63,958 nucleotides of DNA, filler included, from Octopus bimaculoides (GCF_001194135.2; 7 parts of 7 records of this genome joined end to end with filler, not necessarily neighbours in it); one strand, 5' to 3'; positions 150 through 20,048 are shown, numbered from the whole stretch's first letter. The notes: a model not told the origin generated them from the sequence alone. Translations and numbers: made by a program.

Positions 150-375
150 GCTCCATTTCATTCAGATGTAGAAATGAGTTGCGACATCACTGGTGCCACG
201 TTATATCGACCTTTGCCTTTCCCTTGGATAACATCGGTGGAGTGGAGATGGGAGACTGGTATGCATGGACGACTGTTGGTCTTCCATAATCAACCTTTTC
301 CTGGATTCGTGCCTAGAAGGGGAATTTTCTAGGTGCAATCCCATGGTCATTCATAACCGAAGGGGATCTTTACCC
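150..375 (+). mobile_element. SINE body/3' part without tRNA head (family C in this report)
   Basis: Reverse-complement match to 20049-20260 (…ctaggtgcaatcccatggtcattcataaccgaaggggatctttaccc). Confidence 0.7.
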
Positions 376-1763
376 TGTTACGAAAATTATGAGTTGGATC
401 TGCATTATAAGTTGGATCTGCAACATGGCTTCGAAAGTTTCGATTTTTCCCTTAGGTATGTTTCTTAACGTTATCAATTACTTAAGTGAAGTGCGTTTGC
501 TTCAATTATGTTTGCTGATAACTTAAGAAAAGGCATGAACTTCTCAGTTCTCCTTTCTCAATATTTTTTTATCTTTCAAAACATAGAGCCTTGTTCTTTA
601 CTCATATTTAGGTATAAGTAACCGTTATAGAGTGAGTTCTCAACGAACACAGTTGCCGACTCGGCTTCAATTTCAGCTTTAAATTATTTCTCTTCATTCA
701 TGATCACTGATATCACTTCGTAAGTTACGAATATTCAATTTGTAACTTTTTATTCTAATGTATATGCAATAAAACGATGTTTTGCATCACTTCAAGCCAA
801 CTAAGGTCTGTTTTAAGTAGTTCTACAGAAATCATGATACAATACATTCCGTGTTAAGTTATGACCACAGTAAGTGACAATCGTTAAGGAGTGGTCCAAA
901 TCCGAAAAACTTTTCTGCAATGGAGAACAGATAAGTCATCCTTCAGGAAAGGAACCATCACTGATACGAGTTGATTTTTATTTATTTCTTTATAGAATTT
1001 CCACTCAAATTTGATTTGCTATAATGTTGATGGCCAAAATTATGTACTAATGAGTTCCGTTAAAGTGTATATGACCACATCATGATGTATAACTGAGAGT
1101 GCGTGTTTGATATGTACGTGATCTATTACACATCATAATATGGTAATAAAATAGACAATAACTTTGAGGTATTACTTCAGTCTTTTGCTTATAACCCTTT
1201 ACATACCAGAGCTGTCTGTGAATGTGGATATTAGTAACTTTTTGCAGCCATTGGTAACAAAATGGAAGCCAAGAAGATAATAGTTGCGATTACTTTAACA
1301 AATCAAGAAAATTCACGAAACCGTTTTCAAAGTTTGGCTGGAAGTTTTGATCTAATTATTTATGATGTTATGTTGCTGGATGGTCATGTCATCAGCTGAA
1401 TCAATGTGTTGTCAGATTTTTCATTCTTTAACCCGAAACGAAACATTTGACGATAAACCTGGTCATTGACATTAAACAAGTATAACTAAAAGTTTTAGGG
1501 AAAAAAATTATACTTGCAATGTTGTTTGAAGTGATGAGCCTTTTGCTGGTCATTCAGTTACTTGATAATTAATAATCCGTCTGCTCTAACGATTTTTGTT
1601 GATCAACTAATTATTCGACAAAAGCAATAACATCGTATTACTCAATGATATAATAAGGGACTGGCAATAAAATTTCAATTAATATCATCGGGATTGACAA
1701 TAAAAATTCAATTAAGCATTCAATGTATGAGTTCATTGTATTGGGACACACTTATTAAATACG

Positions 1764-7394: not shown

Positions 7395-8140
7395 TTATAA
7401 ATCTAATATTTTCCTATCCTTCCTTAATACTGGTTCCCATATGCAATTCCTATCTGCACTAGGTCTGCTTAGGAGGTTGTTGTGTCCTAGCATATGTGCT
7501 GCTTCTTTTAGTTTTCGTTTTTTCCAGTGGTGTTCTCTGTCTATTATTTTAACTTCATCCCACAGGGGAGGTGGTCTCCATTTTTTCCATACATGATCAG
7601 CTATACCCGATTTATCAATATCTCCTCGTGTCACAGCTTTGCGTTGTTCGTCTACCCTTATTTCGAAGGGGGCGGTATGTTTCACCTTTGTATAACCTAC
7701 CACAGCTGCATGGGTGGAGTACACGCTGTCTTTGGTCATATTCTCTTCTACTGGTGGTTTTACTTGAAGGAAATATTTGCGAAGTGTTGTATTGCTCTTG
7801 AATACTGTCCTGATGTTATATGGGCCGCATATCTTTTGTATCTTTTCGGAGAGGCCTTTCACATAGAGTAGACAGACTGTGGACAGTTTATTGGTTTCAT
7901 CTTCTCTTTGCTTCATAATTGGAGCGGATAGTATGTTTTTGGGGTAGTTGTTCTTAATAGATTGTTATTGAGTTTGATCATTTCTTCGCGGTTTGTATCA
8001 CGATCGCTACTTATATTTTTTGCACGATGTTTTAGGCACTGAGCAATCCTTCTCTTTACACTGTATGGATGGTAGGAATTGAAGTTGAGGTATCACAGTC
8101 AATCCTTGAAGGTAGTTGCACTTGCTCTCTCTACTACATA
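7395..8140 (-). mobile_element. Penelope-like element fragment (RT C-terminus + GIY-YIG endonuclease), degenerate
   Basis: ORF 7395..7916: LYVKGLSEKIQKICGPYNIRTVFK…SGIADHVW…WDEVKIIDREHHWKKRKLKEA. Upstream, IAQCLKHRAKNISSD…LLR-NYPKNIL resembles the PLE RT thumb region. Confidence 0.85.
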
Positions 8141-19010: not shown

Positions 19011-19055
19011 ATTGTAAACAGAATCTTGTTTATAATTGTTCTTATTTTATGTTTG

Positions 19056-19144
19056 GAAATTTTTCGTCACACACCTGTGACCTCTTCAGCGACTCTCCAT
19101 CACTGAAGAGGTCACAAGTGTGACGAAAAATTTCTAGACGATGG
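19056..19144. ncRNA. Inverted pair of minimal hammerhead-ribozyme-like cores forming a ~32-bp hairpin (probable PLE terminal-repeat relic)
   Basis: + strand: CTGAAGA(19103-09)-G-GTCAC-aagt-GTGAC-GAAA(19125-28)-aatTTC. - strand (19089 to 19056): CTGAAGA-G-GTCACA-ggtg-TGTGAC-GAAA-aatTTC. The loop between the two is 13 nt. Confidence 0.6.
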
Positions 19145-19241
19145 ACATAAAAAGCAAAATAAATAACAGTAAATATTATCTTTCCCTTTGTAGTCATTGT
19201 TTTGATTAATATTATATTTTTAATACTTCACGCACTGCTAG

Positions 19242-19530
19242 GAAGACAGTACAAGCAGCTCTTGGAAAATGCAGCAATCCACGAGAGAAAACACCAAATC
19301 AACAATGGAATGTTTTCCCCCTGGGAACATACCAAATGGTTACATTATCACCAAGTCTCCATACTATCCGGGTAGCTATATAACATTCACGTGTTCCTCG
19401 GGATTTTTTATGGTAGGTTCACCTTTCTTGAAATGTTCGGTTAAGTCAATCTGGATCGGCAGCATACCACGATGTGTTTCACTGGATTTGTCAACCAAAT
19501 TTAACATCAATTCATCTGATATCACTCTAG
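19242..19530 (+). CDS. Exon encoding a Sushi/CCP (SCR) domain of a cell-surface protein
   Basis: CFPPGNIPNG…YYPGSYITFTCSSGFFMVGSPFLKC…IWIGSIPRC has 4 Cys plus the conserved Trp. Acceptor ctgctag|, donor ctag|gtaggc (phase 1). Confidence 0.88.
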
Positions 19531-20048
19531 GTAGGCTTATTCATGGCTTTCAATAAGCATTCATCATTTTAGGTATGGATATATAAAAAGATAAACTCAT
19601 AGATAGCAAAATTCTGATTACAAAATTGTCGGAGAATATGTAACTTTGAAATCATAATCACTGTGTACTAACCCTCTTGTTGGTACGTGGCTGACCCACA
19701 AGAAGTTCAGTGTTCCAATTTGAGTAATAAGGGGACAAAAGAGCTTCAAGTCGAGTAAACTTGGGATTTGAAACTTCCGAGAGTTTAACTGTGCCTCGGG
19801 AGCGTTTAGTGGAACAATTTGCATCCCATTCGAAGTATGGTCCTACGTTGCAAAAGTTGCTCCAGTAGAACTTAAACCCACTTTTAGATCTTGTGCTACA
19901 TATAGCTTCACGAAAGACCAATAAATAAGAAAACCTAATCGAGTTGTAGCGTTAGAATAGTCATTTACAGAGTATTTGCCGGTGGACTTGATATTAGACA
20001 TTGTGAACAAAACATAGGGCCGTCGCAAATAGATGCTTTAGTTTAAAG

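What the first reader, a model, noticed from the sequence alone, without database searches (positions are those of the whole stretch)
19056..19144. Back-to-back hammerhead-ribozyme-like cores forming a hairpin ~100 nt upstream of a host exon
Seen in sequence: the + strand reads CUGAAGA-G-GUCAC-aagu-GUGAC-GAAA-a-au-UUC with a partial stem I (ccauc-a pairing with u-[agac]-gaugg). The - strand of the adjacent 34 nt carries a second, nearly identical core. Established: CUGAnGA-stem II-GAAA…UH is the hammerhead catalytic core; PLE terminal repeats carry minimal type I hammerheads with a tiny, often palindromic stem III (here AAAUUU) thought to act as dimers; PLEs often leave inverted terminal copies; one extra base after A9 is tolerated in natural hammerheads. 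Inference: in the CCP gene pre-mRNA the two cores can either pair into a ~32-bp hairpin (ribozyme masked; a Dicer/ADAR-type substrate) or refold to cleave after C19134, just upstream of the 3' splice site at 19241. That would be a possible self-cleavage versus hairpin switch affecting inclusion of the CCP exon. It may equally be an inert TE scar.
Basis: partly seen in the sequence, partly recalled or inferred. Interest (0 to 1): 0.78.

Follow-up and report, generated by a model that had tools for sequence, protein, structure and literature searches.

The report
Retrotransposon hammerhead pair in an intron
The hairpin is a decayed head-to-head pair of tail fragments of a very abundant Penelope-like retrotransposon, each carrying that element's minimal hammerhead ribozyme motif; this is a known kind of feature, and this copy is almost certainly an inert scar rather than a splicing switch.

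Summary
About 1,900 exact copies of this core plus helix II occur in the window's 2.34-Gb genome, against 0 for a reversed-pattern control. [quoted passage not shown] Closest named relatives are Octopus vulgaris proteins.

The motif has the published traits of PLE minimal hammerheads: an extra base after A9, a G10.1-C11.1 pair, a 6-bp helix II, a short helix I and a tiny palindromic helix III. Two PLE subfamilies keep the core and helix II identical. They differ only at N7 and in loops 2 and 3, and helix I co-varies. Head-to-head 5'-truncated copies are the usual PLE insertion structure.

The proposed switch between self-cleavage and hairpin is not supported. The hairpin (-59.5 kcal/mol) outcompetes any hammerhead-compatible fold (-18 kcal/mol), each transcript carries only one sense core, and the + strand helix I is a by-product of the foldback. 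Verdict: an ordinary transposon scar, a new member of a known kind.

The parts
19025..19101 (-). Left arm. It is a fragment of the PLE 3'-terminal unit (unit positions 46-129) in reverse orientation, about 88-89% identical to the subfamily A consensus, with a 7-nt gap (6 + 1 nt) relative to the consensus TCCATTGTC.
   Evidence: blastn and local alignment against the family consensus; family consensus.
19100..19173 (+). Right arm. It is the same unit (positions about 55-133) in forward orientation, about 82% identical to the consensus, with a 2-nt deletion in loop 2.
19103..19134 (+). Hammerhead motif of the right arm: C3-A9 at 19103-19109, extra G at 19110, helix II 19111-19115 with 19120-19124 (5 bp, loop AAGU), G12-A14 at 19125-19127, palindromic helix III strand AAAUUU at 19128-19133, and C17 at 19134.
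   Evidence: Read directly. The core positions and the G10.1-C11.1 pair are intact. Published traits are in PMC4209133.
19056..19089 (-). Hammerhead motif of the left arm, read on the - strand: C3 at 19089, extra G, a 6-bp helix II GUCACA/UGUGAC with loop GGUG, then GAA, AAAUUU and C17 at 19056. Helix I is essentially absent: only G2.1-C1.1 pairs, and the downstream sequence is CAAACAUAAAA.
   Evidence: descriptor hit at 19089 on the - strand.
19051..19139 (.). Hairpin formed by the two arms in any transcript of either strand. The stems are 19051-19092 and 19100-19139, with a loop of about 7 nt at 19093-19099.
   Evidence: the repeat finder pairs I1 and I2, 91% complementary. MFE is -59.5 kcal/mol on the + strand and -58.7 on the - strand, z -12.2 and -10.0.
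19242..19539 (+). Context only: a Sushi/CCP-domain exon of the host gene, with an AG acceptor at 19240-19241 and a GT donor at 19540. The hairpin ends 102 nt upstream of the acceptor.
   Evidence: Open frame 19242-19556, translation, Pfam Sushi PF00084 with E = 2.2e-9 and 38 bits against a cut-off of 20.7. The splice sites are read from the sequence and were not confirmed with transcripts.

Best explanation
The feature is a fossil of one insertion event of a Penelope-like retrotransposon (PLE). [quoted passage not shown]

PLE proteins nick and extend both DNA strands. This commonly leaves two 5'-truncated copies head to head. Here only about 75 bp of each copy survives.

Each copy carries the element's own minimal type I hammerhead, which lies about 520 nt after the ORF stop and about 200 nt before the element's 3' end. 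Within the active PLE lineages the hammerhead is a selected motif. It presumably works as a double hammerhead on multimeric or tandem PLE transcripts, possibly assisted by the PLE protein.

In this intronic remnant the motif is inherited baggage. Both cores are still intact by sequence. In any transcript, however, the two arms zip into a hairpin of about 40 bp that masks them, no second sense copy is available to build helix III, and helix I is missing or fortuitous. The locus therefore most likely does nothing beyond placing a long hairpin in the intron.

Shown here: the family membership, the link to the PLE, the pattern of motif conservation and the energetics. Inferred: insertion by priming on both strands, and the lack of cleavage in vivo.
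For: - Copy number in the window's genome is high. The hairpin query gave at least 951 candidates, most matching one arm at 92-96% identity. The outer part of the unit gave at least 3,952 candidates. There are 1,899 exact core plus helix II motifs against 0 for the control.
- Single-arm copies (L024, L039/L061, L009, L060) run without a break from an ORF end through an A/CA-rich spacer into the hammerhead unit.
- The ORF is a reverse transcriptase followed by an endonuclease. It contains ..DVVSLCPSI.. and YSRYVDDINLV. A profile of 20 homologues hits solved reverse transcriptases at E = 2.3e-7 and 6.5e-4 over the G..AG..A / YxRYVDD block. Pfam RVT_1 is only weak.
- The C-terminal NVVYSIRC..YVGETARSIGERANEH aligns column for column with the Pfam GIY-YIG domain of the full-length homologue P0105, which scores 25.1 bits against a cut-off of 22.6.
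- A C-x4-C-xx-C linker precedes the endonuclease, as described for Neptune/Nematis PLEs (PMC8557442).
- The ORF 3' end gave at least 3,220 candidate copies, most of them 5'-truncated.
- Many copies abut (CA)n, (TA)n or (GATA)n microsatellites, a bias known for PLEs.
- The motif matches published PLE minimal-hammerhead traits: a base between A9 and G10.1, a G10.1-C11.1 pair, a helix II of 6 bp or more, a 4-5-bp helix I, a palindromic helix III, and dual motifs on opposite strands 100-700 bp apart (PMC4209133).
- Subfamilies A and B are identical at all core, helix II and extra-G positions. From C3 to C17 they differ at only 5 sites, all at N7, in loop 2 or in loop 3. Helix I changes from GUCG/C-A-GAC to ACCA/UGG, and the 5' flank cannot be aligned.
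- Among the first 100 genomic motifs there are 4 head-to-head pairs, 99-168 bp apart, always '-' then '+' as in the window.
- The PAc PLE protein cleaves and extends both strands (PMC11167929). Inverted 5'-truncated copies are typical of PLEs.
- The hairpin is -59.5 kcal/mol, against -18.0 for the best fold that keeps the hammerhead helices. The double-hammerhead conformations of the window's arms are only -13.6 and -8.4 kcal/mol.
Against: - No hammerhead model in Rfam matches, either at gathering thresholds or at E <= 10 on 301 nt. The same models also miss the PLE-linked copies and a third, textbook-looking minimal-hammerhead family, so this says little.
- I could not show a full-length PLE copy with the motif in both flanking pseudo-LTRs.
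- Pfam does not detect GIY-YIG directly in the octopus ORF. The assignment rests on alignment to a homologue.
- Both arms of the window copy also end at about unit position 130 instead of the element's true 3' end, which simple double-strand priming does not explain. Possible causes are later deletion or internal initiation.
- Both catalytic cores are intact, so residual activity cannot be excluded by sequence alone.
- Nearest-neighbour energies ignore tertiary contacts and proteins.
Confidence: 0.87

Rival explanations
1. In the host pre-mRNA the right-arm hammerhead alternates with the hairpin, and when it is unmasked it cleaves after C19134. This would destroy the intron upstream of the 3' splice site and tune inclusion of the Sushi exon.
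For: The core nucleotides of the + strand motif are all intact and helix II pairs. AAAUUU is a perfect palindrome, better than the family's AGAUUU. The motif lies in the sense orientation of the gene, about 107 nt upstream of the acceptor.
Against: The gap to the hairpin is 41.5 kcal/mol, and the complement is transcribed first. Helix III cannot form in cis, and there is one sense core per transcript. The + strand helix I is borrowed from the left arm, so unmasking the core by removing or unpairing the left arm also removes helix I. Minimal PLE hammerheads show low activity even as dimers (PMC4209133), and the PAc hammerhead needed its protein (PMC11167929). The copy is one of thousands of fragments, 11-18% diverged and truncated.
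Confidence: 0.02
2. The hairpin itself, not the ribozyme, has a secondary effect. As a near-perfect intronic duplex of about 40 bp it could be edited by ADAR or diced into small RNAs. It could also change splicing kinetics of the nearby 3' splice site, as happens with other inverted transposon pairs.
For: The hairpin is very stable. Generic miRNA-precursor models score it below threshold purely for its shape: mir-3804 at 44.9 bits against 90, mir-1295 at 43.5 against 100. The host is an octopus, by the named homologues, and from my own knowledge A-to-I editing is unusually pervasive in this lineage.
Against: There is no match to any curated miRNA family at threshold. Family foldbacks elsewhere give the same kind of sub-threshold hits. 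No expression, editing or small-RNA data can be consulted here. Head-to-head pairs of this family recur in the genome (4 pairs among the first 100 motifs listed), so nothing singles this one out.
Confidence: 0.08
3. The element is a foldback or MITE-type DNA transposon with long terminal inverted repeats, and its resemblance to a hammerhead is coincidental.
For: Many copies are palindromic with arms of up to about 270 bp and centres deleted to varying extents. Long palindromes are typical of foldback elements.
Against: Single arms continue inward into the ORF with reverse transcriptase and GIY-YIG. The inner ends vary, which is 5' truncation, while the outer ends are fixed. The motif's free positions vary and its constrained positions do not between subfamilies, with compensated helix I changes. 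A third hammerhead family with different helices but the same architecture exists in the same genome.
Confidence: 0.02

Closest known systems
Minimal type I hammerhead ribozymes (min-HHRs) of metazoan Penelope-like elements (Cervera & de la Pena 2014, PMC4209133)
   Same: Both have the CUGANGA...GAAA core, an unpaired base between A9 and G10.1, a G10.1-C11.1 pair, a long helix II (6 bp), a short helix I (4 bp in the family) and a tiny palindromic helix III that implies a double hammerhead. Both occur in thousands of mostly solitary, truncated copies per genome, with some pairs on opposite strands 100-700 bp apart, and are linked to a PLE with reverse transcriptase and GIY-YIG.
   Different: The host lineage is a cephalopod, and the helix sequences are new. 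I found no paper in the held library that describes octopus PLE hammerheads. Helix III here is AGAUUU in the family and AAAUUU in the window, that is 2 bp plus a palindromic AU loop, so it lies between the loop-less 'min' form and the canonical form. The window copy pairs with its inverted twin only 7 nt away, so it is permanently masked.
Head-to-head (inverted, 5'-truncated) insertion structures of PLEs (Evgen'ev & Arkhipova 2005, cited from my own knowledge; Craig et al. 2021, PMC8557442; PAc biochemistry, PMC11167929)
   Same: Two copies lie in inverted orientation with variable inner (5') ends. The element's 3' ends face outward. Insertion next to microsatellites is frequent.
   Different: In the window both arms are also cut at their outer ends, at about unit position 130 of about 250. 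This is not the standard picture and remains unexplained.
Animal non-LTR retrozymes (Cervera & de la Pena 2020, PMC7229834; Li et al. 2026 preprint, 10.64898/2026.07.22.740005)
   Same: Both are non-coding repeats that carry hammerheads and are related to PLE pseudo-LTRs.
   Different: Retrozymes are direct tandem repeats that yield circular RNAs. No tandem direct arrangement of the unit was seen in the 85 loci examined. This locus is an inverted pair, which cannot give a double hammerhead in cis.
Rfam Hammerhead_1 (RF00163) and the other Rfam hammerhead families
   Same: They share the same catalytic core and type I topology.
   Different: There is no match even at E <= 10. I infer that the models expect a closed helix III hairpin, which these dimer-type motifs lack.

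Membership tests
Hammerhead ribozyme, PLE-type minimal type I | Catalytic core C3 U4 G5 A6 N7 G8 A9 ... G12 A13 A14, an A15.1-U16.1 pair, and H17 at the cleavage site | tested here: met
   All core positions are present in both arms, with C17 at 19134 (+) and 19056 (-). The same core is found in about 1,900 genomic copies.
Hammerhead ribozyme, PLE-type minimal type I | Helix II closed by G10.1-C11.1, usually 6-8 bp in PLEs, with one unpaired base between A9 and G10.1 | tested here: met
   The + arm is G + GUCAC/GUGAC (5 bp). The - arm and the family are G + GUCACA/UGUGAC (6 bp). The traits are listed in PMC4209133.
Hammerhead ribozyme, PLE-type minimal type I | Helix I of about 4-6 bp flanking the core and the cleavage site | tested here: inconclusive
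   In the family, subfamily A has GUCG/C(A)GAC (4 bp with a bulge) and subfamily B has ACCA/UGG, so the pairing is compensated. In the window, the + arm pairs only through left-arm bases (CCAUC/GAUGG), and the - arm has a single G-C pair.
Hammerhead ribozyme, PLE-type minimal type I | A very short, palindromic helix III or loop 3 that allows a double hammerhead | tested here: met
   The window has AAAUUU in both arms and the family has AGAUUU. This region cannot close in cis. The predicted double hammerhead is marginal: -13.6 and -8.4 kcal/mol for the window arms and -15.0 for the family consensus.
Hammerhead ribozyme, PLE-type minimal type I | Match to a curated covariance model | tested here: not met
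   There was no hammerhead hit at gathering thresholds or at E <= 10. PLE-linked family copies and a third hammerhead family are missed as well, so the test lacks power for this subclass.
Hammerhead ribozyme, PLE-type minimal type I | Site-specific self-cleavage | not testable with these tools
   This needs in vitro transcription and cleavage assays, or cleavage-end sequencing.
Penelope-like element (source of the unit) | Reverse transcriptase domain | tested here: met
   The ORF contains YVDD and upstream RT motifs. A profile of 20 homologues hits solved reverse transcriptases at E = 2.3e-7. Pfam RVT_1 is weak, at E = 0.004-0.02.
Penelope-like element (source of the unit) | GIY-YIG endonuclease, C-terminal in canonical clades, with a CX2-5CxxC linker in Neptune/Nematis | tested here: met
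   NVVYSIRC..YVGETARSIGERANEH aligns with the Pfam GIY-YIG domain of homologue P0105, which scores 25.1 bits against a cut-off of 22.6. C-TDRN-C-TV-C lies upstream. Pfam gives no direct hit on the octopus ORF.
Penelope-like element (source of the unit) | Pseudo-LTRs (partial tandem copies) carrying the hammerhead on both sides of the ORF | not tested
   Only the 3' side was shown.
Penelope-like element (source of the unit) | Heavy 5' truncation and adjacent inverted 5'-truncated copies | tested here: met
   The inner ends vary and the outer ends are fixed. Head-to-head pairs recur genome-wide.
microRNA precursor (Rfam sub-threshold hits) | Score at or above a family's gathering threshold | tested here: not met
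   The best hit is mir-3804 at 44.9 bits against 90. The hits reflect hairpin shape only, and other foldback copies give the same kind of hit.
Foldback / MITE DNA transposon | Terminal inverted repeats as the element's true ends, with no coding retroelement continuous with an arm | tested here: not met
   The arms are the 3' ends of a retroelement, and single arms continue into the ORF.

The most novel reading that the evidence does not exclude
The most novel reading the evidence leaves open concerns the duplex rather than the ribozyme. Head-to-head PLE tails, of which several inverted pairs were seen in this octopus genome, could systematically create perfect intronic duplexes of about 40 bp. 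In a lineage with exceptionally active RNA editing, these might be used as ADAR or Dicer substrates that influence splicing or editing of neighbouring exons. This copy, about 100 nt from a Sushi exon acceptor, would be one example.
Probability: 0.05. Interest if true: 0.45.

Novelty: new member of a known kind. Interest (0 to 1): 0.15.

Why it matters
It matters little for the biology of this locus. It is a correct sequence-only recognition of a known class, the minimal hammerheads of Penelope-like elements, in an octopus genome for which I found no published description in the held library. Three by-products are useful. First, they define two abundant PLE subfamilies in an octopus genome, with about 1,900 intact motifs, whose pattern of substitution shows that the hammerhead is under selection in the active elements. 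Second, they show that the Rfam hammerhead models miss this whole subclass, so annotation based on covariance models under-reports it. Third, they show that PLE head-to-head insertions are a recurrent source of long intronic hairpins.

Tried and rejected
- Rfam scans of the window at gathering thresholds and at E <= 10, and of five family loci, gave no hammerhead hit. The only hits were generic miRNA-shaped ones below threshold. I rejected these as evidence either way.
- I first read the family as a MITE or foldback element, or as a SINE, because of its symmetric arms and a seemingly fixed inner end. I dropped this when single arms were seen to continue into an ORF.
- Pfam on the ORF fragments gave nothing or only a weak RVT_1 hit. 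This was resolved through homologues, a profile search against PDB sequences, and alignment to a homologue with a Pfam GIY-YIG hit.
- I tried to obtain a full-length element with both pseudo-LTRs.
- My first dimer model kept helix I within each molecule, which makes a pseudoknot and could not be evaluated. I corrected it to the true double hammerhead with intermolecular helices I and III.
- An alternative parse of subfamily B, with helix II as GGUCA/UGGCC enclosing 22 nt, was rejected because subfamily A cannot form it, whereas the shared parse fits both.
- A test of whether the window ORF 7395-7964 belongs to the same PLE profile was not significant.

Full report
**Observation.** On the + strand, 19103-19134 reads CUGAAGA-G-GUCAC-AAGU-GUGAC-GAA-AAAUUU-C. 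On the - strand, 19089-19056 reads CUGAAGA-G-GUCACA-GGUG-UGUGAC-GAA-AAAUUU-C. The two arms, 19051-19092 and 19100-19139, are 91% complementary. They fold into a single hairpin of -59.5 kcal/mol, z = -12.2, with 0 of 200 shuffles folding as well; the - strand gives -58.7 kcal/mol. Rfam finds no hammerhead, either at gathering thresholds or at E <= 10 on 301 nt. It gives only sub-threshold hits to generic miRNA hairpin models.

**A repeat family.** The window lies on a 200-Mb contig of a 2.34-Gb eukaryotic genome. The hairpin gave at least 951 candidate matches there, most of them to one arm at 92-96% identity, often with a second, inverted arm 60-130 bp away. Aligning the copies gave a unit of about 250 nt. 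In hammerhead sense it reads ...GGGAUGGAGAGUCG CUGAAGA G GUCACA GGUG UGUGAC GAA AGAUUU C CAGACAAUGGACAU..., followed by about 200 nt to a fixed outer end (...CUUGCAAAACAAAUUCAUAAAC). That end very often abuts a (CA)n, (TA)n or (GATA)n microsatellite. The outer 133 nt alone gave at least 3,952 candidates. The inner ends of the arms vary and the outer ends do not.

**The unit is the tail of a Penelope-like element (PLE).** In single-arm copies (L009, L024, L039/L061, L060) the similarity continues inward. It runs through an A/CA-rich spacer of about 520 nt into an open reading frame. That ORF 3' end gave at least 3,220 candidates in the genome.
- The longest clean pieces (L079/L085, L073) show reverse-transcriptase motifs..GSMDVVSLCPSIDVDF....GAAIGVSIAGDVANLFMVWWD.. 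and ..YSRYVDDINLV... A C-x4-C-xx-C linker follows, then NVVYSIRC...YVGETARSIGERANEH...LYQH..EQEH.
- Pfam sees only a weak RVT_1 match (E = 0.02 and 0.004) and no GIY-YIG directly.
- A database search found 106 homologues. The named ones at 80-86% identity are Octopus vulgaris proteins, some of which UniRef calls 'Reverse transcriptase domain-containing'.
- A profile of 20 homologues hits solved reverse transcriptases at E = 2.3e-7 and 6.5e-4 across the palm motifs.
- The Pfam GIY-YIG domain of the full-length homologue P0105 (25.1 bits against a cut-off of 22.6) aligns column for column with the NVVY...YVGET...R...EH block.

[quoted passage not shown] Heavy 5' truncation, adjacent inverted 5'-truncated copies and a bias toward microsatellite targets fit as well (PMC8557442). 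I could not show the pseudo-LTR arrangement with the motif on both sides of an ORF.

**The motif is a real, selected hammerhead in the element.** Cervera and de la Pena (PMC4209133) list the traits of metazoan PLE minimal hammerheads:
- a conserved G10.1-C11.1 pair;
- a long helix II of 6-8 bp;
- a short helix I of 4-5 bp;
- a palindromic 15.2-16.2 region or loop 3, implying a double hammerhead;
- thousands of mostly solitary copies;
- some dual motifs on opposite strands, 100-700 bp apart.

The octopus family shows all of these. The exact pattern CTGANGAGGTCAC-N4-8-GTGACGAAA occurs 948 + 951 times, against 0 + 0 for the reversed pattern.

Two PLE subfamilies, A (the window's) and B, have ORFs about 67-70% identical. 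Their 3' regions are largely diverged. From C3 to C17, however, they differ at only five sites: N7, two bases of loop 2 and two of loop 3. All 13 core bases, the extra G and all 12 helix II bases are identical. The 5' strand of helix I lies in a region that cannot otherwise be aligned, yet pairing is kept: GUCG/C(A)GAC in A and ACCA/UGG in B.

A third, unrelated family in the same genome has the same architecture with different helices: CUGAUGA-A-GGCUGG...CCAGCC-GAAA-CG-U. Rfam misses all three families.

**The window copy.** Homology to the unit spans 19025-19101 (left arm, unit positions 129 to 46, 88-89%) and 19100-19173 (right arm, unit positions 55 to about 133, 82%). The locus is thus a head-to-head pair whose inner ends lie only about 10 nt upstream of the cores. 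It also lacks the outer 120 nt or so of each arm. That symmetric outer truncation is not explained by the standard model.

Both arms share the G15.2-to-A change that makes helix III a perfect AAAUUU palindrome. This fits both arms having come from one source RNA. It exists because the unit contains GAUGG upstream and AAUGG downstream of the core as direct near-repeats. It is not the family's helix I. The - strand core has essentially no helix I.

Among the first 100 genomic motifs listed there are four head-to-head pairs 99-168 bp apart, always with the cores reading outward. The arrangement is therefore routine for this element. It is consistent with the finding that a PLE protein cleaves and extends both target strands (PMC11167929).

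**Function of this copy.** The exon beginning at 19242 is a genuine Sushi/CCP exon. The hairpin is therefore plausibly intronic, and its + strand core lies in the gene's sense orientation. Five points argue against cleavage.
1. The best structure that keeps the hammerhead helices is -18.0 kcal/mol, against -59.5 for the hairpin, a Boltzmann weight of about 1e-30.
2. Because the cores read outward, the sense core is always in the 3' arm of a transcript. Its complement is already there when it emerges.
3. Helix III cannot close in cis, and a transcript carries one sense core only. A double hammerhead would need two pre-mRNAs to pair. That conformation is worth only -13.6 (+ arm) or -8.4 (- arm) kcal/mol.
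4. Unpairing the left arm also removes the + arm's only helix I.
5. Published minimal PLE hammerheads cleave weakly even as engineered dimers, and the anole PLE hammerhead required its protein.

The proposed switch between self-cleavage and hairpin is therefore not supported. What remains is a long intronic duplex, which may be edited or diced like other inverted transposon pairs. Nothing singles this copy out, and no expression data were available.

**Verdict.** It is a decayed head-to-head remnant of a PLE, and it carries the element's minimal hammerheads. The kind is well known. The octopus families appear not to have been described in the literature I could search, so I rate it a new member of a known kind with low interest.

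Noticed in passing
window 7395-7964 (-), and window 9767-9729 (-): A 189-aa open frame (..LYVKGLSEKIQKICGPYNIRTVFKSNTTLRKYF..) belongs to another very abundant repeat, with at least 4,938 candidates in the genome at about 70-78% amino-acid identity. It has no Pfam hit and no significant match to the PLE profile. From memory it resembles the linker and endonuclease region of a different PLE clade. About 1.8 kb upstream on the same strand lies ATGUCA-CUGAUGA-A-GUC...GAC-GAAA, a hammerhead-like core with a helix II of only 3 bp.
   Followed up: partly
L016 about 1038-1085 (+) and L058 about 259-305 (+): This is a third minimal-hammerhead family whose helix sequences are unrelated to the window's: CUGAUGA-A-GGCUGG-(8-nt loop)-CCAGCC-GAAA-CG-U. 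Between the two copies, the helix I strands GACAC/GUGUU can be reconstructed. Rfam does not detect it.
   Followed up: partly
PLE 3' end, unit positions about 140-230 (e.g. L061 about 7960-8060; consensus): A second block is conserved between subfamilies A and B downstream of the hammerhead: AAUAUA(U/C)AGUGCGUGUGUUU..UUGGC...AUGACCAUCCC.AAAUA.AACAAUAUCU. It is a candidate recognition or initiation site for the PLE reverse transcriptase and endonuclease.
   Followed up: no
window 19025 and 19173 (outer ends of the two arms): Both arms of the window copy stop at about unit position 130, roughly 120 nt short of the element's normal 3' end. The truncation is symmetric. Later deletions or internal initiation of reverse transcription (PMC11167929) could explain it, but neither was tested.
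   Followed up: no
L061 1904-2935 (+) and 5054-5368 (+): Next to one PLE copy there are other transposon remnants. One ORF has a Helitron/PIF1-helicase-like N-terminal look and another is a mariner/Tc1-like transposase fragment (..HPPYSPDLAP..). I recognised both by eye only.
   Followed up: no
genome-wide (loci L031-L085): Assembly gaps (runs of N) sit inside or right next to a large share of the PLE copies and their flanking microsatellites. As a result, 'open frame' lengths reported by six-frame searches are inflated, and full-length copies are hard to recover from this assembly.
   Followed up: partly
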